DNA of 64,000 nucleotides, taken from Octopus sinensis. Lineage: Eukaryota. The notes under the pieces are model-generated. The model was not told where the DNA came from. It was given only the letters and a program-made list of their open reading frames with translations, and made no database searches. Positions 11,913 to 62,582 of the stretch are shown here, piece by piece (the first letter of the stretch is position 1; each line of letters begins with the position of its first letter). The position numbers and the translations under genes were made by a program. The stretch is taken from assembly GCF_006345805.1 (NCBI RefSeq), contig NW_021836167.1, positions 1 to 64,000 of the forward strand, in the 5' to 3' direction.

Positions 11913-12400
11913 TAGGGCAACCGCAAATATGACTTAAAAAATTCAAATATGACCGACAAAGTATGATTTATATAGCCACAAAAATATATGCCCGTGAATA
12001 TGATCTGATAACTTTTTATTTTTATGTATTAATACAGTTTTAAGTGTTCGTTTATATGGCACTCAAATTTATTATAATATAACGAGAAATAATATGTAAT
12101 GTTATCATTTTTTAGTTTCTATCCTTCTCCAGCATTTTCTAAAGCATAAAAAACTTCATTCAATCGAAATAGTTATAGCTGGACATTTCCATAACATTGA
12201 ACAAATTTCTGGAAAACAATTAGCAATCGTTGCACCATGGATTTCTTTTAATCGATTTTTAAAATTTGGGTTTGATCAACATTCAAAAATATTTTCAAAT
12301 TTAAAATAAGATTTTTGATCCGTTTAACATTTACAAGATATTTATCATATATACTAATTTGCGACAATGTGTTTCCGATGGAACATAATGATTATGAAAA
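11913..12400 (-). mobile_element. degraded relative of the hAT family at 38078
   Basis: TAGGGCAA terminus at 11913; AATATGAC subterminal repeats; C-terminal WKCPAITISIE*SF matches CQPSSSSIERCF. Confidence 0.45.
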
Positions 12401-12457
12401 ATTTTATAAAGAGGGATATTCACATCCGTCATCATCAAAACTAATTTAAAACAAAAA

Positions 12458-24577: not shown

Positions 24578-26215
24578 AATGTCCTCGACTTACATGATGA
24601 GGTCCTTAAAACCTTCCCCCCAAAAAAATAAAAAAAAAATTTTCTGCATTTTGGTTAAAATGAACAACTACAATGTCCTCGACTTACATGATGAAGTCCT
24701 TAAAACCTTCCCCCCAAAAAAAATTAAAAAAAAATTTTCTGCATTTTGGTTAAAATGAACAACTACAATGTCCTCGACTTACATGATGAAGTCCTTAAAA
24801 CCTTCCCCCCAAAAAAAATTAAAAAAAAATTTTCTGCATTTTGGTTAAAAGGAACAACTACAATGTCCTCGACTTACATGATGAAGTCCTTAAAACCTTC
24901 CCCCCAAAAAAAATTAAAAAAAAAATTTTCTGCATTTTGGTTAAAATGAACAACTACAATGTCCTCGACTTACATGATGAAGTCCTTAAAACCTTCCCCC
25001 CCAAAAAAATTAAAAAAAAATTTTCTGCATTTTGGTTAAAATGAACAACTACAATGTCCTCGACTTACATGATGATATCCTTAAAACCTTCCCCCCAAAA
25101 AAAATTAAAAAAAAAATTTTCTCCATTTTGGTTAAAATGAACAACTACAATGTCCTCGACTTACATGATGAAGTCCTTAAAACCTTCCCCCCAAAAAAAA
25201 ATTATTAAAAAAAATTTTCTCCATTTGGTAAAATGAACAACTACAATGTCCTCGACTTACATGATGAAGTCCTTAAAACCTTCCCCCCCAAAAAAAAATT
25301 AAAAAAAAATTTTCTGCATTTTGGTAAAATGAACAACTACAATGTCCTCGACTTACATGATGAAGTCCTTAAAACCTTCCCCCCAAAAAAATTAAAAAAA
25401 ATTTTCTGCATTTTGGTTAAAATGAACAACTACAATGTCCTCGACTTACATGATGAAGTCCTTAAAACCTTCCCCCCAAAAAATAAAAAAAAATTTTCTG
25501 CATTTTGGTTAAAATGAACAACTACAATGTCCTCGACTTACATGATGAAGTCCTTAAAACCTTCCCCCCAAAAAAAATTAAAAAAAAAATTTTCTGCATT
25601 TTGGTTAAAATGAACAACTACAATGTCCTCGACTTACATGATGAAGTCCTTAAAACCTTCCCTCCCAAAAAAAATTAAAAAAAATTTTCTGCATTTGGGT
25701 TAAAATGAACAACTACAATGTCTTTGACTTACATGATGAAGTCCTTAAAACCTTCCCCCCCAAAAAATTAAAAAAAATTTTCTGCATTTTGGTTAAAATG
25801 AACAACTACAATGTCCTCGACTTACATGATGAAGTCCTTCAAACCTTCCCCCCAAAAAATTAAAAAAAATTTTCTGCATTTTGGTTAAAATGAACAACTA
25901 CAATGTCCTCGACTTACATGATGAAGTCCTTAAAACCTTCCCCCCCAAAAAAAATAAAAAAAAATTTTCTGCATTTTGGTTAAAATGAACAACTACAATG
26001 TCCTCGACTTACATGATGAAGTCCTTAAAACTTCCCTCCCAAAAAAAATTAAAAAAAAATTTTCTGCATTTTGGTTAAAATGAACAACTACAATGTCCTC
26101 GACTTACATGATGAAGTCTTAAAACCTTCCCCCCAAAAAATCAAAAAATTATTTTCTGCATTTTGATAAAATGAACAAGCGAATGTCCTCGACATTCATG
26201 ATGAGGTCCATTAAA
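24578..26215. repeat. minisatellite of about 95 bp, about 17 copies, inside the Helitron
   Basis: Unit AATGTCCTCGACTTACATGATGAAGTCCTTAAAACCTTCCCCCC(A)nTT(A)nTTTTCTGCATTTTGGTTAAAATGAACAACTAC; copies differ mostly in homopolymer length. Confidence 0.95.
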
Positions 26216-26430
26216 ACCTTCAAGGCAAAAATCTCACGTATTAAGAATATCCTTGATGAAAACGACAGCGAGAATATTAACAATGATGAACTCCCAATTA
26301 TTCGCGATAAAGAAATTCAATTCATCCTATGTTTTTCTCTTTTAAATTAAATGCATATATCATTATCGACCATGAATCAAAATTAAAGCTATTATCATAT
26401 TTGACTTTGACAGAATGTGCAATCACAGAT

Positions 26431-27173: not shown

Positions 27174-27699
27174 TGATAATAACCAATTTTAATTTTTATT
27201 TTGTCTAATGTGACTTGTGGTCCAGTAGCATTTGAAGAATGTGGGGGATCATCATCTATTACAAGCATTGATGTTACAGATTGTAATATGACCTCATGTT
27301 ATGTATATGGAGGGGAGAATTGGAAATAAAAATAAATCTTACCATATGTATAAATACGATTTTATTTTTAGCAAAGTCACTTAGAAAAATCAGCGCGGAG
27401 GGATTTATCGAAACACCCCGTCTTCCCATTTTTAGAGCACCCAACGCATGTCTTTATATCTCAGAGCAGTGTCCACCTGTAGAAAACAGTCAAATCAGCT
27501 TTGACTATAGACGGAAACTTCCCAATGTACATTTGAATGTATTTTATATATATTTATCATATAGCCGATGAATCTAAAAGTTTTTGTTAAGTTTTTAGAA
27601 GACGATGAAATAATTGCCTGCGCAAAATTTAATGTACAGATTGGCTCGCGTGAAAAGAATTTTGAAAATGAAATTAATGTCAAAATTCGATTTGACTGA
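27174..27699 (+). pseudogene. NPC2: NPC2-like copy with its start codon destroyed
   Basis: Paralog of 45830-46356; the A of ATG is replaced by Helitron sequence and there is a +1 base in the signal-peptide region. Confidence 0.85.
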
Positions 27700-27829
27700 A
27701 TTTCATTAATCTAATTAATCTCACTAATAATTCTGGTTTTGATTTTGATTAATTCTTTGTTAACAATTTATAATTTGAGGAGAACCATAAGTACAGTGCG
27801 ACCCAGAATTGTGGGAATTTTTCTTTAAT

Positions 27830-28200
27830 TTTGAGGCTTTCCCCAAAAAGAGGGTTTTCCTTAAATGTAAGTCTCTCCTGTTCGATGTCTTACCTCAATA
27901 ATATAACCAAGACAAATAACTACAATTTTTATTTTGTTTTAATTCGGACAAGTTTAGTAATGTCGATTCGCAGACATATGTTGATCCAAATATCGCTAAA
28001 TTTTTGTATTATTGGCTAGATTCGGTAATCGGTTCTCTGGAATTCTCGAATAAAAGTCAATTATTGCAATGTTGCTGAACAAACTTTTCAGTTCGACATC
28101 ATTTTGAAAATCAATCAATTCCAGTTGGTAAATGCAGGAAATTTCCTCACATTTTCATAATTAATGGAGATGAAAATAATCTCATTGAATTTGCATCTTC
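27830..28200 (-). mobile_element. hAT Buster C-terminal fragment (also at 46490-46860)
   Basis: LELIDFQNDVELK, AIFGSTYVCEST, RIKTK. Confidence 0.65.
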
Positions 28201-31589: not shown

Positions 31590-31660
31590 TGCATCTGCCG
31601 GGAATCGAACCCAGTTCACTGGCATGGGAAGCGAACATGAGACGATCACACCACAGATGG
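31590..31660 (-). pseudogene. tRNA-Gly(CCC) pseudogene
   Basis: Copy of 56351-56421 with G1 changed to C, D-loop GG lost and an anticodon-stem mismatch. Confidence 0.8.
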
Positions 31661-32059: not shown

Positions 32060-33183
32060 TAAAAATTTTTAGAAATAAAATATGTTTGATTTATAGTATT
32101 TTGAGATGTTTTTAATATCAATTGTAGCCATGACCTTGAGTTCATTTTGTCAAAGAATGAGTGAATTCTCTTCATTGTGCTTTTTAATAATTTGAATTTA
32201 CTTATTTTTAAAAGACAGGAGGAAAGATTATAATATATTAGTGGCATCCATTACAATCAATGGAATACAATTTGAAGGTTACCGCAGTTAACCTGTGCAT
32301 GTGAATATGTCCAAATTTTAGAAATAAATCTTATTTTTAGAAATAAAATATGTTTGATTTATAGTATTTTGAGATGTTTTTAATATCAATTGTAGCCATG
32401 ACCTTGAGTTCATTTTGTCAAAGAATGAGTGAATTCTCTTCATTGTGCTTTTTAATGATTTGAATTTATTTATTTTTAAAAGACAAGAGGAAAGATTATA
32501 ATATATTAGTGGCATCCATTACAATCAATGGAATACAATTTGAAGGTTACCGCAGTTAACCTGTGCATGTGAATATGTCCAAATTTTAGAAATAAATCTT
32601 ATTTTTAGAAATAAAATATGTTTGATTTATAGTATTTTGAGATGTTTTTAATATCAATTGTAGCCATGACCTTGAGTTCATTTTGTCAAAGAATGAGTGA
32701 ATTCTCTTCATTGTGCTTTTTAATGATTTGAATTTATTTATTTTTAAAAGACAAGAGGAAAGATTATAATATATTAGTGGCATCCATTACAATCAATGGA
32801 ATACAATTTGAAGGTTACCGCAGTTAACCTGTGCATGTGAATATGTCCAAATTTTAGAAATAAATCTTATTTTTAGAAATAAAATATGTTTGATTTATAG
32901 TATTTTGAGATGTTTTTAATATCAATTGTAGCCATGACCTTGAGTTCATTTTGTCAAAGAATGAGTGAATTCTCTTCATTGTGCTTTTTAATGATTTGAA
33001 TTTATTTATTTTTAAAAGACAAGAGGAAAGATTATAATATATTAGTGGCATCCATTACAATCAATGGAATACAATTTGAAGGTTACCGCAGTTAACCTGT
33101 GCATGTGAATATGTCCAAATTTTAGAAATAAATCTTATTTTTAGAAATAAAATATGTTTGATTTATAGTATTTTGAGATGTTT
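32060..33183. repeat. 268-bp tandem repeat, about 4.2 copies, containing a proteasome-beta last exon
   Basis: TTAGTGGCATCCATTACAATCAATGG recurs at a 268-bp period (about 32238, 32506, 32774, 33042). Confidence 0.95.
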
Positions 33184-33245: not shown

Positions 33246-36200
33246 GTGTTGTGAGCCACGTGCATTGGTTTCTTGTGGTGTTTTCAATTTCTTTCATTGC
33301 ATCTGTTTATCTCTCTCTTATCCTTCTATCTCTCTTATCCTTCTTCTCCATCCCTCTCTTTCCCTTTTTTTTCTTTTTTTCTTTTTTCATTTTATCCTTT
33401 CATTCTTGTCTATCCCATTTCCCTATTTTTATTCTCTTTTCCTCTATTCTATTGGACTCTTCTGTAGCTATCCCCCATGTCATTTTGTTTATCTTGTAAA
33501 TCTGTTAATTCTCGCAAACCGGGTCGCTCCTGCGCCTCTTGCAGTCAGTTTTTCCACCTCTCGTGTGTTAAACTCACTAAACGTGATTTGGCGTCAATCC
33601 TTTCTTGGAAGTGCCCCTTATGCCTCCCACACACGTGGATCCCTAAGCCTTCTCCCCACCCGGCGCCCATCCCTCCCGACAAGTTCTTGTCGCTTCTTTC
33701 CGAATCCCGAAGCCTCCGCGTAATCCCTGCAAGAATTCCCAAATCTACGCGAATCTGCGTTGCTGATACGCTATCCGACATAATCGATCAGTCCCTTTAA
33801 AGCAATCTTCCAGAAACTTGGTGCAAACTATTTTCGTTTCCTTCTGTTTGTCTGGGCGCTGCCCCTCGTTAAACGGAGTCAGTAAATAGGACATCGGCCG
33901 CTCAGCAGATTAAAGACCGCTACAGTTCGTTCATAAAGGCACCCTTCGACTTATCATGTATCACGCCAGATCGCCCCTCGACCGCGAAATCTCGCGGACG
34001 TCTTAAACAAGACGAAGGGGTACGCTTAGCCCGGTCAGTTAACAGCAAACTAATGCAGGGAGATGTCTCAGCTGCTGTCCGCCTGATTTCATCCACGGCA
34101 TCCATTGCCCCGCATACTGATTCCGTTCTGAATTCACTCCAGCTGAAACATCCTCCCGCTCCACCTGATATCCGTGAACCCCCTCACATAGCCAAATCCG
34201 AACGAATTGTTTCCTCCAGTGACGTGTTAGCCTGCCTTGGATCATTTCCACCGAGCAGCAGCGGGGGAGTAGATGGCCTAAAGCCGATACACCTAAAGGA
34301 TCTTGTCGCGCCCATGACAGGGGAATCTGGTGCACGCCTCCTGTCCTCGATTGCATTCTTGTGCAGCAGAATTGTCTCTGGAAATATCCCATCTTTTGCA
34401 CGCGATTTACTGTGCGATTTACTGTTCTCGGCCAACCTGACAGCACTTAATAAAAGTGATGGGGGCATCAGACCCATCGCTGTGGGAAACACATTCAGGA
34501 GGCTCTCTGCAAAAATTATCCTCAGTGTTGTCCTCTCTGATTTGAGCCCTCAGCTGCTGCCACATCAGTTTGGTGTCGGTGTTCGCGGTGCTTGTGAGGC
34601 TTCTGCCCATGGGGTGAGGGAGTTGGTCATCAATGGCAATCCAAAAATTCCATATCTTGTTAAGCTGGACGTGCGCAACGCTTTTAACAGTGTTCGCAGA
34701 GACCACATCCTGGAAGTTGTGCACACCCGCTGCCCGGCACTCTACCCAATTGTCCATCTATCTTATGCGCGTTCCTCGAATCTCCTTTTTGGGAAAAATC
34801 TGTTGTACTCAGCGTCTGGGGTTCAGCAAGGGGATCCATTGGGACCTCTCCTATTTGCCCTCGCAGTGGACCATATTGCTAAAAGGTTTTTGTGCTTGCT
34901 AAATTTCTGGTATCTCGACGATGTCACCTTAGGTGGCTCGCTTGAAAATATTCATAACGACGTTGCTGATATTATTTCGGGTTTTAGCCAAATTGGCTTA
35001 TCCCTTAATGGCTCAAGTCGGAATTTACCCTGCTCTCCCTCGATCATTCTTTATTTCATCCTGCCTTCACGTCCCTGTCCGAGAAAGTTGTCGGTCTCTC
35101 TGCGACAGACCCGGATGATCTGGTCATCCTTGGTTCACCAATCTCTGGTCGAGGTATTTCCGCTGCCATTGAGTGTAAAAAACGCCAGCTGGCTCAACAT
35201 CTCCTAACTGGGCGCACATGTCGGGCTATTAAAGCTTCTTAATGTTGACTTTGGCGGGGACCAACTTACCCGCGCAATGTTACCCCTCCGTTTCGGAGGC
35301 ATCGGTATCCGCTCGTGCAAAGACATTTTTATCCCATGCTATCTATCTTCGCTCTCGGCATCAAGAAATTTTGTCAGTTCTGTTCTTTTTCGCTCCCCTG
35401 AACGTTTTGAACTGACTGAATTTTCTTCTGCCCTCGCTGCCTGGACCGCCTCAGGTCTTGCCTTCCCTGTGGAGGATCACCTGCAGAGGAGTTGGGACTC
35501 CATCCGCTGCAAAGAAGTTATAAAGTCCCTTAAAGGAAGCGCCGATCAAGTTAAACTCGCCTCGTTGAATGCAGCCTGTCACCCGCATTCTGGAGACTGG
35601 TTGAAAGCCATCCCTCTGTCCACCGCTGGCCTCCTCTTGGATGATGAATCGACTCGAATCGGGACCTGTCTTCGTCTGGGAATTCCCCTTTGCCACCTTC
35701 ACCGGTGCAAGTGCGGCCACATGATTGACCCCGATGGTCTCCACCCCCTTTCGTGCCGCTTAAGCACCGGGCGTATCCCGAGACACGCTGGCCTGAACCA
35801 CGTCGTTAAACAGGCCCTCAATGCCGCAAGCTTCCCTTCTGTTCTGGAGCCTGCCGGCCTCGACCGTGGCGACGGCAAGCGTCCAGACGGAATGACGGTC
35901 TTTCCATTCTCCGAGGGGAAATGCTCGTTTGGGATGTTACCTTCGCGGACACCTTTGCCCCCGAGACCGTTGCTCAGTCTGCGTCCTCCCCCGGCTTCGC
36001 TTCCCGTCGGGCTGAGGAGACGAAGCGGAAGAAATACGCCTCTCTCCCACAAAATTACCACTTTGTCCCGATTGCTGTGGAGACAAGTGGAGTGATAGGG
36101 ACGGCCGGAGTGTTGCTTCTGACGAATTGGGAAGTGCATCCACAAGTGCACGAAGGACCACCGCCAAATCGGCTGGCTGTACCAGAGGATATCGATCGCA

Positions 36201-36350: not shown

Positions 36351-37395
36351 CAGTGAATACCCCCAAATTCGCCATTTTTGAATTCGCCAATTCTTAGATT
36401 CGCCTTTTTTTAAAAAATTCTAGTTTCAATGGAAATTCGCCAATTCTGAAATTCGCCACAATTTTTTAAAATTTTTAAATAAAAAATACAAAAATATGGA
36501 TAAATAATACATTCTTAAAAAGTTCTTGTTCAAGTTTGAAAAAAGACATGAATTCCGTCTGAGAAAATTGCATGGGCAGATAAAAATTATGTTCTTTCCT
36601 AAAAATACAACAAGAATAATTCAACCAATGGACATAGGAATTATCAAAACATTTAAAGTGCACTTTAATAAGCACCAATTATTTTATCTCACTAAAATTT
36701 TGGAAACTAACGAAGTTTCGGTTTATGAATCCTATAAACATTTAAATCTCAAAGACACTGTTTTTTATAAAAATGGCTTGGGAAGACGTATGCTCGAACA
36801 CTATTGAAAATTTCTTCAAAAACTGAAAAAAATAGATTTTGATGAACAATCTACAGATAAAAATTTAATCGATGAATTGATAATTAAAAAAAATATTTAT
36901 GATCCTATTCAAATTGAAAAATTCATTTATATAAATTATTTAGAAGAAAATGCAATTAGCGAAGAAAGTAATTTCAATAATGAAGATCCTGAAGAACAAT
37001 CTGCAGATAAAAATTTTTCCTTCAAATGAACAAACAATAGTTTATCTCACTAGAAATGAGATCGGTGTAAAATTAAGAGAAATTGAGAAGTCACTAATCG
37101 AAATTGGCGAAAACGAAGACGTGCGTCTAGTTACTTCAATTCGAAGATTTGAGGGAAAAAATCAAAATATAAAAAGACAACAAACAGGACTGGAATATTA
37201 CTTTGACAAAAAAGCATAATTCTTTCTTAAAATAAAATTAATTTTTTCAATCACGTCAATTTTGGCTATTTTCGAATTATTAAACAGTTCTACTCACATT
37301 CAAAAATAATTGATTATATTCTGAAATTCGCCATTTCTTAAATTCGCCGCAAAAAATGACGGAACCAAAAATGACAAATTTTGAAGTATTCACTG
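36351..37395 (+). mobile_element. internally deleted pogo/Tigger element with TIRs and TA TSD
   Basis: TA-CAGTGAATAC...GTATTCACTG-TA with about 30 bp of imperfect TIR; KFEKRH..KLHG fused directly to FFPKNTTRIIQPMDIGII. Confidence 0.9.
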
Positions 37396-38077
37396 TATTT
37401 CTAGAATCAAACGAGAAATATGTAATTTTGATGGATGTGAAGGTTCTGAGGGCTTCAGAGAACCCGATAATAGTGATAAACATTCATTTCTCGACAAGGT
37501 CGTTTTTACTTCATTTCAAAAGTAATAATTAAGTATGCATAAATTTCTATAGATTTAGAAATTATAATTTAGTAGTTTCCGGACCATTATTACAAACTAC
37601 TGCCAAGAAAGCAGCTCAAATTTTAAATTTACCAGAATTTAAAGCTTCCAATGGATGGCTTGACCGTTTTAAGAAACGGCATCAACTTTTTTTAAAGCAA
37701 TTTCTGGTGAAAAAAGTAATGCGACACATCCATGCTGAAAAGCTTTTTTAAAACTTATGATAATCACATGGAAGCATATTCCAACAAGGATATCTTCAAC
37801 TGCGATGAGACTGGATTATTTGTCAAATAATCCGACTGTAGATCCTTCGTAGAGTTAACGGACACTTGTAGTGGTGGCAAAAAAATAAAGAAAGAGTTAC
37901 CGTTCTTTTATGTACAAATTTAATTGGTGAGAAAATGAAACCTTTGGTAATCGGAAAATACAAGTCTCCTCGTTGTTTAAAAAATTTTAATATTGAACAG
38001 CATAATGTATTATATATGTCTTCAAAAAATGCTTGGATGACAAGTTATATTTTTAATGCATGGTTATATGTGATAAT

Positions 38078-39856
38078 TAGGGCAATTTAAGTTAAAAAAG
38101 TTAAAATATATGAAAATGTGTATTTTGGCTTAAAAGTAAAAATAAAGTATTTTTTAAATGAAATAGTTACTTATTAAAGAAAAAAATAAAGTTAAAAAGT
38201 TAAAAAAAATTTTTTTATAAAGTTAAAAATTTTAACTTTATTTAAAATAGCGCGTGGGTGTTTAGTATGCCAAGTACTGCAAAAACAATGTATTTTAAGG
38301 CAAAAAAAATTGTTATTGAATATCCGCTGGAGTTTTTATTACGAGAGAATGGCGAGTTGCAATGTCAACTTTGCTTATGCACAGTCAGGTGTGAGAAAAA
38401 GCATTTTGTGAATTCTCACCGAGAATCGAAGAAGCACTCAAATTTATTAAGTTTTTACAAATTAATATAATTTTTAGAGAATAATTTCTATCAGCCTTGT
38501 TTGGACGAGTTACCCAATGATGACTGGTCAATGCAAGTCACTAAAGCATTTATTCAATGCGATATACCCTTGCATAAATTGACTATGCCTCCTCTAAAGA
38601 ATTTATTCAAGAATACTTCTTTGCCTCTTCCTTCCCAATACAAAGCACGAATGTGCGTTAAACAATTGAAAACTGAATATATTGTATTATTTCAAGAAAA
38701 GTTTAGGTTTATGAATATATAATTTTTTAGAAATCAACTTGTATTCGCCATAAGTGACGAGGTCACTATTCGTAGTCAAAAATTTGTTGCAGTTTTAATG
38801 GGGATACTTAAAAATCCCGATAAAACTTATTTGATTTCTTTCGTAAAAATTGATAAAACTTCTACCAAAGAAACAATTATTCAAATTGTTGACGATACGA
38901 TTAAATGCGTTTTAATTGAAAGACAAAATTTCCTTCTCCTAATAACAGATTCCGCTAAATATATGCTAGCAGGTTTTAATTTAACATATAATTATAGCTG
39001 GAAAAGTTCTTAAGCTTTTATATCCAAGGTTATTTCACGTAACTTGTGTTGCTCATCTGATGCATAATTGTTCAATGAAAATCAGGACTATTTATCCTGA
39101 AATTGATTCTCTTATTGCATCAATTCAAGCGGCAATAACAAAAAATAACAAGAGAAAACGACTATTTAATGAAATTGGAATTCCACCTCATGTAGTTTTA
39201 ACTAGATGGGGTACTTGGCTAACTGCTGCATTTTATTATGCAAAAAATTTAATACATGTGATAAACATTTTCAAAACAATTCCTGATGATGGAATCATTG
39301 TTCAGGCTGCAAAAAATAGCCTAAGAGATGAATCTCTAGTAAAAAGCTTAAGTTCTATTGTTAGAAATTATTCGACAATTCCAGGTAAAACTAGTTTAAT
39401 AATAGCAGAATTATTGTGCAAATTTGAAAGTTCTCACTCCTCAATAGAGTTAGCTTACAATGAGCTAAAGAATTTAAAATTTGACGACGAATCAGATATA
39501 ATTGAAAAATATTTGAATGAACGATTACAAAAAAATGATTTATGTCAAATTATAAGAATGACAAATTCATCAATTTCTCCTGAAGAATATTGTATGCTTT
39601 TAAAGTGTCAGCCTTCATCCTCTTCCATAGAACGATGCTTCTCTCAAATTAAAAACTTTATGAGGGATAACAGAAATTTTAATATTGAAAATATAGAGAA
39701 TTATGTTATATGTTTGTATAATAAATGATTCTTAAGTTAAAATTTGTTAGGTTAAAATTTTTGTTTTATAGGTTAAAATTTGGTTATTTTTAGGTTAAAA
39801 AGTTAAAATTTTTAGGTTAAAAAATCGAAGTTTTTAGGTTAAAAAAAATTGCCCTA
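38078..39856 (+). mobile_element. complete 1779-bp hAT transposon
   Basis: 11-bp TIR TAGGGCAATTT/AAATTGCCCTA; 8-bp TSD GTGATAAT at 38070-38077 and 39857-39864; GTTAAAA subterminal repeats at both ends. Confidence 0.95.
38267..39728 (+). CDS. intact intron-containing hAT transposase, 454-461 aa
   Basis: Introns 38451-38477, 38707-38730 and 38973-38997 (optional in-frame 39385-39405) give one ORF: C2H2 finger CQLC-x14-H-x5-H, ISDE, TDSAKYM, HVTCVAH, TRWGTW, SIERCFS. Confidence 0.9.
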
Positions 39857-39960
39857 GTGATAATTTATATGTGATAATTTATCTATTCGGAACTTATTCG
39901 TCATTAATTTGTCATTAACAAATAAATTCAGAATATGTAAGAAGAACAGATTATAAGAAT

Positions 39961-40652
39961 TAGTGATGCACCGATAACCATTTTTGGATTTTGCCGATTA
40001 CCGATTATCCGCCAATTTCACCGATAGTAATTTATTTTATTAAAAATGTAATTAAATATTTTGTTTCATAAGACTTCAAGATTTCATAAGACTTGTATGA
40101 TTGAAAGAATTAAAAAATTGATTGTTAAATATATGAAGGATAGTAATTCTCATGACACGAAGTTATCTGAAAATGCCATTTCTTTGACAAAAATACAAAA
40201 TTCGGAAACATTAACATTTGAAAAAATATTTTCTCAAATTTCATCTTCTAACCGAATTATGTCTATGGAGAAAAATTACCAACATTGCTATTTGACGGAA
40301 CTTCAAAATTATTTAGAGCTAGATTTAATACCACGAACTGATAATATACTTCACGAATATATTTCCCCGCTTAAGTAAAATGGCGTTGAAATATTTAACA
40401 GCTCCTGCTTCGTCTGTAGAATGCGAAAGAGTTTTCAGCACTGGAGGAAATATATATCAACCGAAAAGAAATAGACTTTTGCCAGAGAATGGAGAAATGA
40501 TGATGTACCTTCAATATAATTTTAAAACATTAGACTTTAATTATTGATTCTTTTAAACAAAATTTGTTTTTTTAACGTTTTGTTGTATACAATTGTATTT
40601 CGGAAAATAATTACATTACCGATTAATCGGCAGATTAATCGGTGCACCTCTA
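39961..40652 (+). mobile_element. non-autonomous hAT deletion derivative
   Basis: TIR TAGTGATGCACCGAT/ATCGGTGCACCTCTA; dimerisation domain LSKMALKYLTAPASSVECERVFSTGG..KRNRL. Confidence 0.85.
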
Positions 40653-41370
40653 GATTATAGGAATCAATTCAAAAAATGTACAAAATAATGATAAATAAGT
40701 TCAGAATATGTAAGAAGAACAGATTATAGGAATCAATTCAAAAAATGTACAAAATAATGATAAATAAGTTCAGAATATGTAAGAAGAACAGATTATAGGA
40801 ATCAATTCAAAAAATGTACAAAATAATGATAAATAAGTTCAGAATATGTAAGAAGAACAGATTATAGGAATCAATTCAGAAAATGTACAAAATAATGATA
40901 AATAAGTTCAGAATATGTAAGAAGAACAGATTATAGGAATCAATTCAAAAAATGTACAAAATAATGATAAATAAGTTCAGAATATGTAAGAAGAACAGAT
41001 TATAGGAATCAAATCAAAAAATGTACAAAATAATGATAAATAAGTTCAGAATATGTAAGAAGAACAGATTATAGGAATCAATTCAAAAAATGTACAAAAT
41101 AATGATAAATAAGTTCAGAATATGTAAGAAGAACAGATTATAGGAATCAATTCAAAAAATGTACAAAATAATGATAAATAAGTTCAGAATATGTAAGAAG
41201 AACAGATTATAGGAATCAATTCAAAAAATGTACAAAATAATGATAAATAAGTTCAGAATATGTAAGAAGAACAGATTATAGGAATCAATTCAAAAAATGT
41301 ACAAAATAATGATAAATAAGTTCAGAATATGTAAGAAGAACAGATTATAGGAATCAATTCAAAAAATGTT
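40653..41370. repeat. 69-bp tandem repeat, about 10.4 copies
   Basis: GATTATAGGAATCAATTC..GTAAGAAGAACA at an exact 69-bp period; a related partial single unit at about 49283-49340. Confidence 0.95.
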
Positions 41371-41566
41371 ACAAAATGATGAAATTTCGGATAATTTGAT
41401 CATTAAACGAAACTACATCGCGAATTATTCCTTCTGAATCCAATTACATTCAAAAATAATAACGACGATATTGTAAAAAAAGCACAACATGAAGAGAATC
41501 CGTGTGCTTCCACGTAGCACAATTTATTAGGTTTGCCATGAATAATTAAGATAATTAAATAATAAT

Positions 41567-43094: not shown

Positions 43095-43600
43095 TTAGGG
43101 TTCCTCCAGACCACGACCTCTTCCTCGACTTGCACCGCGAGGTCCTCCTCGGGAAGTACCTCTGCCCGCGTGACGATCCCCTTCCCGTGAATTACTTTCA
43201 GGCTGAGTAAAGCGAGACATTGGAAGAAGTTTAGCAGAATCAACGTAAAATTTGGTTTGATCTTGAAACGACTCAGGTTTTATTCCATGAGATGTTTTGA
43301 CTGAGCACATAAAACTATTTATGGGACCAAGGACATCATCCACACTACACATTAAGTCATAAACAACCGATCCAATTTGCTGCTCATTTTCGTTAAAAAT
43401 GGGTGCATTAAAGAATGGAACTTGGTCAAATCCTGAGCAATTAAGAAGCAATAAATCGTCAAAGCTCTTTTCCTTGCTCCTCCCAAACATTTTAGTTCAG
43501 ATGGCTGATTGTAGGAGTAAGATGCTCCTCTATAAGTACCTCGAGAATTGTTATATCGTCCACGTGAGTTATTGAATCCTCTAGTAATTCCTTTGTTCAT
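43095..43600 (-). pseudogene. GAR1: GAR1 copy, 3'-truncated by deletion, with indels
   Basis: Matches 52839-53394 up to the RGRGRG repeat, then fuses to unrelated sequence at about 43103. Confidence 0.85.
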
Positions 43601-45829: not shown

Positions 45830-46356
45830 ATGATAATAACAGTTTTAATTTTTATTTTGTCTAATGTGACTTGTGGTCCAGTAGCATTTGAAGAATGTGG
45901 GGGATCATCATCTATTACAAGCATTGATGTTACAGATTGTAATATGACCTCATGTTATGTATATGGAGGGGAGAATTTGGAAATAAAAATAAATCTTAAC
46001 ATATGTATAAATACGATTTTATTTTTAGCAAAGTCACTTGGAAAAATCAGCGCGGAGGGATTTATCGAAAGACCCCGTCTTCCCATTTTTAGAGCACCCA
46101 AAGCATGTCTTTATATCTCAGAGCAGTGTCCACCTGTAGAAAACAGTCAAATCAGCTTTGACTATAGACGGAAACTTCCCAATGTACATTTGAATGTATT
46201 TTATATATATTTATCATATAGCCGATGAATCTAAAAGTTTTTGTTAAGTTTTTAGAAGACGATGAAATAATTGCCTGCGCAAAATTCAATGTACAGATTG
46301 GCTCGCGTGAAAAGAATTTTGAAAATGAAATTAATGTCAAAATTCGATTTGACTGA
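45830..46356 (+). CDS. NPC2: NPC2-like ML-domain secreted lipid-binding protein
   Basis: Signal peptide; six cysteines (EEC, TDC, TSC, KAC, EQC, IAC); 24-nt (in-frame) and 26-nt introns; ends LEDDEIIACAKFNVQI..RFD*. Confidence 0.85.
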
Positions 46357-56350: not shown

Positions 56351-56421
56351 TGCATCTGCCGGGAATCGAACCCGGTTCGCTCGCATGGGAAGCGAACATG
56401 ATACCATTACACCACAGATGC
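56351..56421 (-). tRNA. tRNA-Gly(CCC)
   Basis: GCATCTG/CAGATGC acceptor stem with discriminator A; TGGT in the D-loop; TTCGC-TTCCCAT-GCGAG anticodon arm; CCGGG-TTCGATT-CCCGG T arm; T4 downstream; the flanking block of about 580 bp is duplicated at about 31423-31992. Confidence 0.95.
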
Positions 56422-61129: not shown

Positions 61130-62582
61130 TTAGCGAACGTAATTTTCCAGGGTAAGAACAGAGTAAGGTCGAGGAGGACTTGGATTTGAATCAAATAAGT
61201 GCCAGAAACGAAGAGTTTCGTCGCCCGAGCCCGTGACAACACTCCTTCCATCCGGAGAAAGTGCCATATATAAAACCCGAGAAGTGTGGCCAGATAACTT
61301 GACAACCGGAGACATTATTGGATACTTCCATACTATCAACTCATTAAAAGAAAATCCATGAGTAGTGACGAGCTCATTTGTGTTCTTTGACCATACCATA
61401 TTACAAATTTGAGATTCAGTCTTGTGATTAGAAAGAGCTTGTCCAGTCAGAGAATTCCACAACCGAATCTCCTGATCGGCAGTACCTCCTCCAGAGGCAA
61501 GAAGTCCCCGTTTATGGGGGGACCAAGCCAAAGCTTTAACAGCAGCTTTATGGTCAGTAAATGTGTAGCTGGGAGTATTGGAATTTCCATAAATATCCCA
61601 CAATAATAATAAATTGTCATTTCCTCCGGAAGCCAAATAGCGCCCATCGGGGGAATAGCGCAGACCACAGACTTCCTGAGAATGCCCCTTGAGTGTACTG
61701 TGATTCCATCGAGAGGCATTGTCCAAATTAGAACTTCCTAAAGTCATTAGACCACAACATCGCATATCCAGCAGAGAAATAGTCTTATCTCGAGAACCGG
61801 AAGCCAAAACTGTCTTATTCCAAGAAAGTGACCCCACTCTTGAAGAATGAGGCCTGAATGACTTTAATTCACGTGCCTCTTCCATAGAATATATTGATAT
61901 TCTCCCCTGATTTGTGGACACAGCAACCACATTCTCTACAGGAGAACAAGAAACTGCAGCCACTGTCTCTGGTGAGTCCAACTCACAAAGTTTCATAACT
62001 GCAGAGCTCTTTGAATTCCAAATGTAAACTGCACTTCCAAGTCCAACAGCCAAATTATCAAAAGGAGACCAATCCACAAGGCTGAGATAAAAGTCATCTT
62101 TAAGATCGGGGCGTCCAAAGTCTTGTAAGGCGATTTTGGAATTTTTCGTGGCTTTTCAATCGCACTTTCAAGCAGACGTCGACTTTTTTCAGTCAGCCCC
62201 AAAAATTCCAAGAAATATAATCAGATTTGTCAATTGATGAATGCTGAGTGTTTTTCCGATCACGTTTGAACCTGAAGTAGTTTGTCGTTTCCTCGAGCAT
62301 TCCGGCTCTCCTCGGAGGTGTTGTTAATTGAGAACGGTTTATTGATTCATTAGCCAAAAGTTCCTGGAAAACTTGATTATTTGCATATTCGCAGTTTTCA
62401 TCAACTGTTTCGGGTGTATCGGGAAAATCGTCGTTTGAATACCAATCTATAGACTCGGAGGGTTCGGCAGTAGGAACTAGTCTTTCGGAATAAACATGTT
62501 TCTTAGAACGAGTAGATCGGACTGAAGACGAATCTTCAAATACTTTGCTCGTCTTTCTTTTCTCAAAAGCATCATTTTTCAT
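61130..62582 (-). CDS. FZR1: fizzy-related/Cdh1 APC/C activator, WD40 repeat, intronless
   Basis: C-box-like ERLVP; LDAP.LKDDFYLSLVDWS; LASGGGTAD; NELVTTHG..VWKYP; GHTSRVLY; VR tail; two 1-nt frameshifts near 62210 and 62110. Confidence 0.9.

What the first reader, a model, noticed from the sequence alone, without database searches (positions are those of the whole stretch)
38078..39856. Intact, possibly active hAT transposon whose transposase is split by host-type micro-introns
Seen: perfect 11-bp TIRs and an 8-bp TSD. Four separate ORF-track fragments become one stop-free 461-aa frame when GT-AG introns of 27, 24 and 25 nt are removed (phases 1, 2, 1 all consistent); a fourth 21-nt in-frame candidate removes an apparent 7-aa insertion. 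The zinc finger, both Asp, the CxxH motif, RW and the catalytic Glu are all present. Established: hAT transposases use a DDE fold with CxxH and make 8-bp TSDs; the N-terminal finger resembles CGGBP-related hATs; intron-containing transposases exist (Ac, P, Tc1). Inference: a long-resident element whose introns shrank with, or were gained under, the host micro-intron regime. This makes mobility depend on the unusual spliceosome, offers splice-level (for example germline) control, and may limit horizontal transfer. A decayed relative lies at 11913.
Basis: partly seen in the sequence, partly recalled or inferred. Interest (0 to 1): 0.75.

Follow-up and report, generated by a model that had tools for sequence, protein, structure and literature searches.

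The report
hAT transposon with 25-base introns
A complete 1.8-kb cut-and-paste (hAT) transposon lies in what is most likely dicyemid parasite DNA filed inside an octopus genome assembly, and its transposase gene reads through only if three or four introns of 24-27 bases, the tiny kind typical of that parasite, are removed; splicing and mobility are untested.

Summary
At 38078-39856 there is a 1,779-bp element with perfect 11-bp inverted ends (TAGGGCAATTT), an 8-bp target duplication (GTGATAAT) and 13 subterminal GTTAAAA repeats. Removing GT-AG segments of 27, 24 and 25 nt gives a stop-free 461-aa protein. It is collinear, without gaps at the junctions, with about 455-aa relatives found elsewhere.

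The family has the Hermes (hAT) fold, and the DDE, CxxH and RW residues are present. Complete relatives have TAGGG ends and 8-bp duplications.

The window is the first 64 kb of an unplaced contig of the Octopus sinensis assembly. It behaves like dicyemid DNA: a host ML-domain gene in the window carries 24- and 26-nt introns, and a fizzy-related gene is only about 50% identical to the best-matching proteins, which include other molluscs.

Of 80 related loci, 27 are intronless. At least 10 carry ordinary 44-347-nt introns at other positions. None shares the window's four positions, so these introns are private to this lineage.

Not shown: spliced RNA, other copies, or activity. This is a new variant of a known kind, of moderate interest.

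The parts
38070..38077 (.). Left copy of the 8-bp target-site duplication, GTGATAAT
   Evidence: Identical to 39857-39864. It fits the hAT target pattern nTnnnnAn and the family pattern nTnATnAn seen in five complete relatives.
38078..38088 (+). Left terminal inverted repeat, TAGGGCAATTT
   Evidence: Matches 39846-39856 as an 11/11 reverse complement. The same TAGGGCAA start is found in relatives L003 and L032, and as the reverse complement at the end of L001.
38089..38266 (+). Left subterminal region and 5' leader, with 5 direct and 1 inverted GTTAAAA repeats; these are presumed transposase-binding sites
   Evidence: There are 13 GTTAAAA copies in the 320 bp at the two ends, 1 in the 1,459-bp middle, and 0.66 per kb elsewhere in the window. 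That they bind transposase is inferred from other hATs.
38267..38450 (+). Exon 1: start codon and the C-x2-C-x14-H-x5-H zinc finger (C33, C36, H51, H57)
   Evidence: The MP.. start aligns with the MPK.. start of the relatives.
38451..38477 (+). Intron 1, 27 nt, phase 1, GTTTTT..TTTTAG, 89% A+T. If it is retained, an in-frame TAA gives a 67-residue finger-only product.
   Evidence: It is the only stop-free GT-AG solution at this junction. The retention product was computed.
38478..38706 (+). Exon 2
38707..38730 (+). Intron 2, 24 nt, phase 2, GTTTAT..TTTTAG, 88% A+T, with in-frame stops if retained
   Evidence: It is the best of 4 stop-free solutions: 130.4 bits, against 123.4 for the next best and 118.5 unspliced.
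38731..38972 (+). Exon 3: first and second catalytic Asp (D147 at 38756-38758, D211 at 38948-38950)
38973..38997 (+). Intron 3, 25 nt, phase 1, GTTTTA..TTATAG. It is the only one of the four whose removal changes the reading frame.
   Evidence: 269.9 bits spliced against 66.8 unspliced. The junction falls in the conserved stretch AxYMxAAG..LK and aligns without a gap.
38998..39384 (+). Exon 4: CxxH (C235 at 39045-39047, H238 at 39054-39056) and RW (39204-39209)
39385..39408 (+). Candidate intron 4, 24 nt, phase 1, GTAAAA..AGCAG, in frame and without a stop, so splicing would be optional.
   Evidence: It corresponds to an 8-residue insertion absent from all 17 relatives. Scores are 493.9 bits (24 nt removed), 488.0 (21 nt removed) and 481.2 (retained).
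39409..39728 (+). Exon 5: C-terminal hAT region with the catalytic Glu (E430 at 39630-39632) in S-I-E-R-C-F-S, and the TGA stop at 39726-39728
39729..39845 (+). Right subterminal region with 7 direct GTTAAAA repeats
   Evidence: The homologous 'aggtcaaaa' repeats lie at the right end of relative L001.
39846..39856 (-). Right terminal inverted repeat (AAATTGCCCTA on the + strand)
39857..39864 (.). Right copy of the target-site duplication, GTGATAAT
37605..38077 (+). Pogo-type transposase fragment (HTH_Tnp_Tc5 plus the start of DDE_1) into which the hAT is inserted
   Evidence: Pfam DDE_1 57 bits and HTH_Tnp_Tc5 34 bits. The reading frame stops at the insertion point.
11913..12900 (-). Decayed, internally deleted relative of the same hAT clade but a different subfamily; one end reads TAGGGCAACCGC
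   Evidence: The profile matches at positions 8-67 (E 3e-7), 73-155 and 441-457, colinear on the minus strand. The end is at 11913. No second end was found.

Best explanation
The element is a structurally complete, autonomous-type hAT DNA transposon of 1,779 bp. It sits in the genome of a dicyemid, a renal-sac parasite of octopus whose DNA was co-assembled into the Octopus sinensis assembly.

What the sequence shows. The single gene encodes a 453- or 461-residue transposase with an N-terminal C2H2 finger, an RNase-H-like DDE core with CxxH and RW, and a hAT C-terminal region. The gene is interrupted by three obligatory spliceosomal introns of 27, 24 and 25 nt. A fourth in-frame segment of 24 nt is a probable optional intron.

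What is inferred. Dicyemid splicing machinery would remove the introns from the pre-mRNA. The protein would then bind the GTTAAAA subterminal repeats and the TAGGGCAATTT ends, and cut and paste the element in the usual hAT way. That would make an 8-bp duplication at nTnATnAn targets, as happened here inside an older pogo fragment. If intron 1 is retained, the product is a 67-residue finger-only peptide. It could compete for the element's ends, so splicing efficiency would set the level of active transposase.

Origin. The four introns are private to this lineage. They were most likely gained after the lineage split from its sampled intronless relatives. Whether they arose at about 25 nt or shrank later is open.

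My separate estimates: real hAT with real introns of host type, about 0.8; the host is a dicyemid, about 0.85; this copy is currently mobile, about 0.35.
For: - Ends, target duplication and subterminal repeats.
- Frame restoration: each reader intron is the top-scoring stop-free GT-AG solution under a profile built without the query. The junctions align without gaps against 17 relatives. The protein keeps 24/27 invariant and 67/76 highly conserved columns.
- Family identity: all 18 aligned members hit DUF659, the hAT RNase-H-like domain, and 12/18 weakly hit Dimer_Tnp_hAT. An AlphaFold model of relative P0001 (pLDDT 88.6) has Hermes transposase as its top 12 PDB matches (E down to 1e-9, TM about 0.5).
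- Complete relatives: TAGGG ends of 10-24 bp, 8-bp duplications, sizes 1.8-2.4 kb.
- Host: the contig is VCDQ01011872.1 of GCA_006345805.1, which is O. sinensis. Its fizzy-related gene is about 50% identical to the best hits, which include other molluscs.
- Host-type introns: the ML-domain gene in the window needs a 26-nt intron and scores above the Pfam cut-off only when a 24-nt one is also removed.
- Literature: dicyemid median intron 27 bp, and a repeat-rich genome of 36.7% GC (PMC6543705, PMC6736024). Among animals, only dicyemids and myxobolid myxozoans have introns under 30 bp (PMC13644364).
- Private introns: of 80 related loci, 27 are single stop-free ORFs and at least 10 carry canonical 44-347-nt introns. 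Those lie at profile columns 47, 54, 71, 76, 87, 131, 156, 179, 310 and 338. The window's lie at 61, 140, 220 and 349.
Against: - No RNA evidence was available. The search of 5.8 billion proteins returned nothing above 44% identity, so it holds no assembled spliced transcript and no near-identical copy. This is weak evidence, because the window's own ORF pieces are not in that collection either.
- Only one intact copy is visible in 72 kb of the contig. Copy number and recent movement are therefore unknown.
- The window protein gives no Pfam hit to Dimer_Tnp_hAT or zf-BED.
- Three of the four introns start GTT, whereas the reported dicyemid consensus is GTa.
- Intron 4 has no stop and keeps the frame, so it may simply be an 8-residue insertion.
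- Two host genes in the window show 1-nt frame changes at homopolymers. The assembly may therefore carry indel errors, and 'intact' rests on this one assembly.
- The dicyemid assignment is indirect. No dicyemid reference sequence could be compared.
Confidence: 0.75

Rival explanations
1. The element is a dead relic. The four short segments are ordinary small insertions in a pseudogene and are never spliced, so no transposase is made.
For: There is a single copy in the window and no transcript or second copy in the protein collection. The surrounding region is a graveyard of broken pogo, Tc1, LINE and hAT pieces.
Against: All four insertions start with GT and end with AG, are 24-27 nt long and 75-89% A+T. 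They sit exactly where their removal leaves a gap-free alignment. By my own estimate from base composition, a random insertion has both dinucleotides about 1 time in 100 even allowing for register slippage, so three or four by chance is below 1e-5. Outside these segments there is no stop or frameshift in 1,386 nt, and 24/27 invariant residues are kept. Truly decayed relatives look different, with abutting frameshifts and single stops (L003, L008, L022, L055).
Confidence: 0.1
2. The gene is a domesticated hAT-derived host gene. It is fixed and single-copy, and its introns were acquired in the way host genes acquire them.
For: Only one copy is seen. Introns are often taken as a sign of domestication, as in the CGGBP study (PMC8097297).
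Against: The element has perfect inverted ends, an intact 8-bp duplication and 13 subterminal repeats. It lies inside another transposon fragment. Relative L032 carries a 63-nt intron yet has 23-bp ends and a target duplication, so introns and mobility coexist in this family.
Confidence: 0.05
3. Same element, different origin of the introns: they are old, were once conventional in length, and shrank together with all host introns during dicyemid genome reduction, rather than arising at about 25 nt.
For: Dicyemid host introns are reported to occupy conserved positions and to have shortened (Ogino et al. 2010, as cited in PMC6543705). Relatives in other hosts do carry 44-347-nt introns. A second, diverged subfamily in the same window suggests long residence.
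Against: None of the four positions is shared with any sampled relative. The closest relatives are intronless. No sister element with longer introns at these positions was found. The data do not decide between gain at small size and later shrinkage.
Confidence: 0.3
4. The contig is genuine octopus DNA, the element is an octopus hAT, and the 24-27-nt segments could not be spliced by a conventional animal spliceosome.
For: The record is filed under Octopus sinensis. The best relatives of the LINE in the window are proteins annotated as O. sinensis, at 58% identity.
Against: Those O. sinensis proteins lie on 0.28-0.5 Mb contigs, not on chromosome-scale scaffolds. The fizzy-related gene is no closer to molluscs than to mites, tardigrades or rotifers. 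A host ML-domain gene on the same contig, present in two paralogous copies, needs a 26-nt intron.
Confidence: 0.05

Closest known systems
Hermes / hobo / Ac (hAT superfamily of cut-and-paste DNA transposons)
   Same: It has an 8-bp target duplication fitting nTnnnnAn, short inverted ends, subterminal short repeats, and a DDE core with CxxH and RW motifs. The family has the Hermes fold.
   Different: The transposase is much smaller (about 455 residues against 612 for Hermes; that figure is from my own knowledge). The N-terminal finger has C-x2-C-x14-H-x5-H spacing and hits no BED model. Sequence identity to Hermes in the structural alignment is only 11-13%.
Intron-containing autonomous hATs such as maize Ac and medaka Tol2 (own knowledge)
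   Same: The transposase gene inside the element must be spliced before an active protein can be made.
   Different: Their introns are of conventional length. Here they are 24-27 nt, a class reported among animals only in dicyemids and myxobolid myxozoans. The positions are not shared with any sampled relative.
Drosophila P element, where retention of the third intron restricts transposition to the germline and yields a repressor (own knowledge)
   Same: By analogy only: retention of intron 1 would give a 67-residue DNA-binding-domain-only product that could act as a competitor.
   Different: The P element belongs to a different superfamily. No tissue-specific splicing, repressor activity, or transcription at all has been shown here.
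CGGBP-type hAT lineage (hAT-19; PMC8097297)
   Same: It is a hAT with an N-terminal zinc finger followed by a helical DNA-binding region. From my memory of the human CGGBP1 sequence, the finger spacing is the same.
   Different: This was not confirmed here. There is no zf-BED or Hermes DBD Pfam hit, and none of the 39 relatives carries a CGGBP name. The only weak profile match is to U1C-type fingers (E 0.004).
Dicyemid host-gene micro-introns (PMC6543705, PMC6736024, PMC13644364)
   Same: The length (24-27 nt against a median of 27 bp), the GT-AG ends, the A+T richness and the A residues a few bases before the AG all match. The host ML-domain gene in the window shows the same type of intron.
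   Different: Host introns are described as sitting at positions conserved with other animals. These sit in a mobile element whose relatives lack them.

Membership tests
hAT superfamily transposon | 8-bp target-site duplication, consensus nTnnnnAn | tested here: met
   GTGATAAT on both sides, with T at position 2 and A at position 7. Five complete relatives give nTnATnAn.
hAT superfamily transposon | Short terminal inverted repeats starting with YARNG | tested here: met
   TAGGGCAATTT, 11/11. TAGGG ends of 10-24 bp occur in relatives.
hAT superfamily transposon | RNase-H-like DDE core interrupted by an all-alpha insertion domain (the Hermes fold) | tested here: met
The model has pLDDT 88.6. 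Its top 12 PDB matches are all Hermes, with E from 1e-9 to 2e-6 and TM about 0.5. The window protein aligns full-length to P0001.
hAT superfamily transposon | Catalytic D, D, E plus the CxxH and RW motifs | tested here: met
   D147, D211, E430, C235-x2-H238 and R288-W289 lie in invariant or nearly invariant columns. That these correspond to the Hermes catalytic residues rests on motif knowledge, not on a residue-level superposition.
hAT superfamily transposon | C-terminal hAT dimerisation domain (Pfam PF05699) | tested here: inconclusive
   The window protein gives no hit at E <= 1. 12 of 18 family members hit weakly, best E 0.0018. The S-x-E-R-x-F-S motif is present.
hAT superfamily transposon | BED-type zinc finger at the N-terminus | tested here: not met
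   There is no zf-BED hit. The finger is C-x2-C-x14-H-x5-H, and a family profile matches U1C-type fingers weakly (E 0.004). A BED finger is common in hATs but not universal, so this does not exclude membership.
hAT superfamily transposon | Excision and reinsertion catalysed by its own protein | not testable with these tools
   This needs an excision assay.
Spliceosomal introns of the dicyemid size class | GT..AG boundaries and a length of about 20-30 nt | tested here: met
   The introns are 27, 24, 25 and 24 nt, all GT..AG. The reference distribution is in PMC6543705.
Spliceosomal introns of the dicyemid size class | Removal restores a reading frame collinear with intronless homologues | tested here: met
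Spliceosomal introns of the dicyemid size class | The same kind of intron occurs in host genes of the same contig | tested here: met
   The ML-domain gene has introns at 46005-46028 (24 nt) and 46196-46221 (26 nt, frame-correcting). Pfam gives 23.8 bits spliced against 19.2 with the first intron retained. The paralogue at 27174-27839 has the same introns.
Spliceosomal introns of the dicyemid size class | Absence of the segments from mature RNA | not testable with these tools
   No transcript data were reachable. The protein collection holds no spliced product.
Domesticated (exapted) hAT transposase gene | Loss of terminal repeats and target duplication; a fixed syntenic single copy | tested here: not met
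   The ends, the duplication and the subterminal repeats are intact. Synteny could not be tested.
CGGBP-related hAT lineage | zf-BED plus a Hermes-type DNA-binding domain recognised by the CGGBP model | tested here: inconclusive
   Pfam zf-BED and DBD_Tnp_Hermes do not hit. The Panther/InterPro CGGBP model and Repbase hAT-19 were not available.

The most novel reading that the evidence does not exclude
After entering the dicyemid lineage, a mobile element gained four new spliceosomal introns within 1.4 kb of coding sequence, each created at or near the 24-27-nt minimum. If so, micro-introns are made de novo in this animal, not only by shrinking old introns. The element would then be a natural, datable reporter for intron gain and for the minimal requirements of splicing. 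Its mobility would be gated by splicing, with a finger-only repressor produced from unspliced RNA, and it could not function after transfer to a host with a conventional spliceosome.
Probability: 0.3. Interest if true: 0.7.

Novelty: new variant of a known kind. Interest (0 to 1): 0.5.

Why it matters
Intron gain is rare in animals and its mechanism is unsettled. Dicyemid introns have been described as old introns that shrank. A transposase gene whose sampled relatives are intronless, or carry introns elsewhere, yet which itself holds four private introns of 24-27 nt, would bear on that question. It offers a small test case for whether such introns can arise at minimal size. It also offers a test for which sequence features suffice for splicing at 24-27 nt. 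The survey shows that this compact hAT clade has picked up introns repeatedly, at positions that differ between loci and with lengths from 44 to 347 nt. There is a practical point as well: an unplaced contig of a widely used octopus assembly appears to be parasite DNA, and its genes are at risk of being analysed as octopus genes.

Tried and rejected
- Ciliate host with a reassigned code. I rejected this. The CDS has 15 CAA and 3 CAG codons but no in-frame TAA or TAG. The window also holds animal-type LINE, Tc1 and pogo elements and a fizzy-related gene.
- Exact-protein look-up of the 222-aa last-exon ORF: not on record.
- Sequence search of the PDB with the protein alone: nothing. With the family profile: only weak U1C-type finger matches.
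- Tandem-duplication origin of the introns. The longest exact matches between each intron and its flanking exons are not beyond shuffles, except weakly for intron 2 (19/500).
- 'Introner'-like origin: no other copy of any of the four intron sequences occurs in the window at up to 4 errors.
- Shared intron positions with relatives: none. One apparent coincidence (L066, column 141) rests on a poor splice solution. The ORF pieces there actually break at columns 148-149.
- A paralogous empty site for the insertion: none in the window.
- Extra copies in the 8 kb of the contig beyond the window: none.
- Other transposons in the window as further examples of micro-introns: the Tc1 and pogo copies are truncated and uninformative.
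- Rooted tree to show that the query nests among intronless relatives: unresolved, nested in 48 of 100 bootstraps. The outgroup members are also continuous ORFs.
- Literature search for hAT intron gain: nothing on dicyemid transposons.
- Apparent frameshifts in the host fizzy-related and GAR1-like genes: these could not be explained as micro-introns.
Full report
**1. What is there**

The region 38078-39856 is bounded by TAGGGCAATTT and its exact reverse complement (11/11). It is flanked on both sides by GTGATAAT. The 8-mer TAGGGCAA occurs only twice on the + strand of the window, and its complement only once, at the right end of the element. The 320 bp at the two ends hold 13 copies of GTTAAAA. 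The 1,459-bp middle holds one, and the rest of the window has 0.66 per kb.

Between the ends, an ATG at 38267 opens a frame that is broken three times. Removing 38451-38477 (27 nt), 38707-38730 (24 nt) and 38973-38997 (25 nt) joins four pieces into 461 codons ending in TGA. All three segments are GT..AG and 88-89% A+T, against 69% for the coding sequence. The first two contain in-frame stops, and the third corrects the frame. The phases are 1, 2, 1.

**2. Is it more than chance**

I built a profile from relatives only and scored every stop-free GT-AG solution of 12-59 nt around each break. The spliced protein aligns with 17 full-length relatives without a gap at any junction. That includes the conserved stretch AxYMxAAG..LK, which intron 3 interrupts.

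The protein keeps 24 of the 27 columns invariant in those relatives, and the three differences are conservative. Truly decayed relatives look different. Their pieces abut with single stops or one-base shifts (L003, L008, L022, L055).

The fourth candidate corresponds to an 8-residue insertion (GKTSLIIA) that no relative has. Removing 24 nt (39385-39408) scores 493.9 bits. It keeps the frame and has no stop, so it could also be a tolerated insertion.

**3. What family**

Pfam sees only DUF659, the RNase-H-like domain of hAT transposases, just above its cut-off. All 18 aligned members hit DUF659, and 12 hit the hAT dimerisation domain weakly.

The tool would not fold the spliced protein, so I modelled the relative P0001 (43% identical in the alignment) with a 20-sequence alignment. 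The model has pLDDT 88.6. Its 12 best PDB matches are all Hermes transposase, with E down to 1e-9 and TM about 0.5.

The window protein has D147, D211, E430, C235-x2-H238 and R288-W289 in invariant or nearly invariant columns.

Complete relatives recovered from metagenome contigs are 1.8-2.4 kb. They have TAGGG ends of 10-24 bp and 8-bp duplications: GATATGAG, ATTATGAA, GTTATCAC, GTAATGAG and GTGATCAT. Together with GTGATAAT these read nTnATnAn, a refinement of the hAT pattern nTnnnnAn. One relative ends in the same AAATTGCCCTA and has 'aggtcaaaa' subterminal repeats.

The N-terminal finger has C-x2-C-x14-H-x5-H spacing. It hits no BED model, and a family profile matches U1C-type fingers only weakly.

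**4. Whose genome**

A gene called in the window identifies it as the start of VCDQ01011872.1, a 75.7-kb contig of GCA_006345805.1. That is the Octopus sinensis assembly. Three things argue that it is not octopus DNA.

- The fizzy-related gene at 61130-62077 is about 50% identical to its best hits. These include molluscs, mites, tardigrades and rotifers alike.
- An ML-domain gene at 45830-46353 needs a 26-nt GT-AG intron to keep its frame. It passes the Pfam cut-off only when a further 24-nt one is removed. A 97.5% paralogue at 27174-27839 has the same two introns.
- Among animals, introns under 30 bp are reported only from dicyemids and myxobolid myxozoans. Dicyemids live in octopus kidneys, have a median intron of 27 bp and have a repeat-rich genome of about 37% GC.

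The LINE in the window has its best relatives (58%) among 'O. sinensis' proteins that sit on 0.28-0.5 Mb contigs, not on chromosome-scale scaffolds. The dicyemid assignment is therefore well supported but indirect.

**5. Where the introns came from**

A pattern-based scan that does not depend on open reading frames returned 80 related loci. Twenty-seven carry one stop-free frame over the whole profile. At least ten carry canonical GT-AG introns of 44-347 nt. One position is shared by three loci.

Mapped on the family profile, the relatives' introns lie at columns 47, 54, 71, 76, 87, 131, 156, 179, 310 and 338. The window's lie at 61, 140, 220 and 349. So this hAT clade has acquired introns repeatedly, at positions that differ between loci and with lengths from 44 to 347 nt. 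The window's four are private.

All four are pure insertions relative to the relatives' coding sequence, not converted coding sequence. I found no sign of tandem duplication or of a repeated 'introner' source. The data do not say whether they arose at about 25 nt or shrank after gain. A second, diverged and broken subfamily member at 11913-12900 (end TAGGGCAACCGC) shows that the clade has been in this genome for some time.

**6. How it most likely works**

Shown: the anatomy of an autonomous hAT, and the need to remove three segments to obtain the protein.

Inferred:
- Transcription occurs, and the dicyemid spliceosome removes the introns.
- The protein binds the subterminal repeats and the ends.
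- The element moves by cut and paste and makes an 8-bp duplication, as at this site inside a pogo fragment.
- Unspliced intron 1 gives a 67-residue finger-only peptide. By analogy with the P element, it might inhibit transposition.

Dependence on an unusual spliceosome, and a resulting barrier to horizontal transfer, are reasonable but untested.

**7. What is missing**

There is no RNA evidence. There is no second intact copy in 72 kb of the contig. The protein collection holds no close relative or spliced product, and it does not hold the window's own ORF pieces either.

Two host genes in the window show one-base frame changes at homopolymers. The assembly may therefore carry indel errors.

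**8. Verdict**

The element is a new variant of a known kind. Intron-bearing autonomous hATs are known, but introns of the minimal animal size class inside a transposase gene, private to one lineage, are not described in the literature I could search. Interest is moderate. It would rise if transcripts and multiple copies are found.

Noticed in passing
whole window (record VCDQ01011872.1 of GCA_006345805.1): The contig is filed under Octopus sinensis but looks like dicyemid parasite DNA. It has micro-introns in host genes, and a fizzy-related gene that is about 50% identical to its best hits, which span several animal phyla. Its genes risk being analysed as octopus genes.
   Followed up: partly
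61130-62580 (-): The fizzy-related (FZR1-like) gene has a clean 315-residue WD40 frame with no intron. Upstream there are two one-base frame changes at homopolymers (about 62100-62230). These could be assembly indels or a pseudogene.
   Followed up: partly
43095-43590 (-): The GAR1-like gene (Pfam Gar1, 52 bits) has a frame change at an AAAA run near 43490. It also has a 24-nt in-frame insertion (VYDLMCSV) whose boundaries do not fit GT-AG in register.
   Followed up: partly
45830-46353 (+) and 27174-27839 (+): The ML-domain (NPC2-like) gene is present twice at 97.5% identity. Both copies have the same 24-nt and 26-nt introns, and the copy at 27174 has lost its start region.
   Followed up: partly
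17101-17200 (+); 31590-31660 (-); 56351-56421 (-): There is a U6 snRNA gene (111 bits) and two tRNA-Gly(CCC) genes. The copy at 31590 scores much lower (33 against 60 bits).
   Followed up: no
23175-24296 and 34053-36095 (+): LINE reverse-transcriptase ORFs of 46-52% G+C sit in a contig of 30-35% G+C. Their best relatives (58% identity) are annotated as O. sinensis proteins on 0.28-0.5 Mb contigs, and one at 49% is annotated in a cuttlefish assembly.
   Followed up: partly
24575-26221; 32065-33183; 40652-41382: There are three tandem arrays: 95 bp x 17, 268 bp x 4 and 69 bp x 10.6, at 93-99% identity. A 41-nt stretch of the hAT's right flank (about 39920-39960) matches the 69-bp unit.
   Followed up: no
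40329-40544 (+): This is the C-terminal end of a second, unrelated hAT transposase (Dimer_Tnp_hAT, 65 bits). A possible end, TAGTGATGCACC, lies near 39966. The element is internally deleted.
   Followed up: no
36574-37000 and 37605-38077 (+); 19346-19906 (+): There are two pogo-type fragments, one holding the later part of DDE_1 and one holding the HTH plus the start of DDE_1. There is also the 3' half of a Tc1-type transposase. All are truncated.
   Followed up: partly
38064-38077 and 39865-39878: The 14-mer TTATATGTGATAAT precedes the element and recurs just after the right target duplication. The empty site would therefore carry a 14-bp tandem duplication, giving three copies of GTGATAAT in all. 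It may be an old footprint or a pre-existing repeat.
   Followed up: no
L011-L090 (metagenome loci): The compact hAT clade (about 455-residue transposase, TAGGG ends) is widespread in metagenome contigs of unknown eukaryotes. Different loci carry canonical introns at different positions, and three loci share one at profile column 310.
   Followed up: partly
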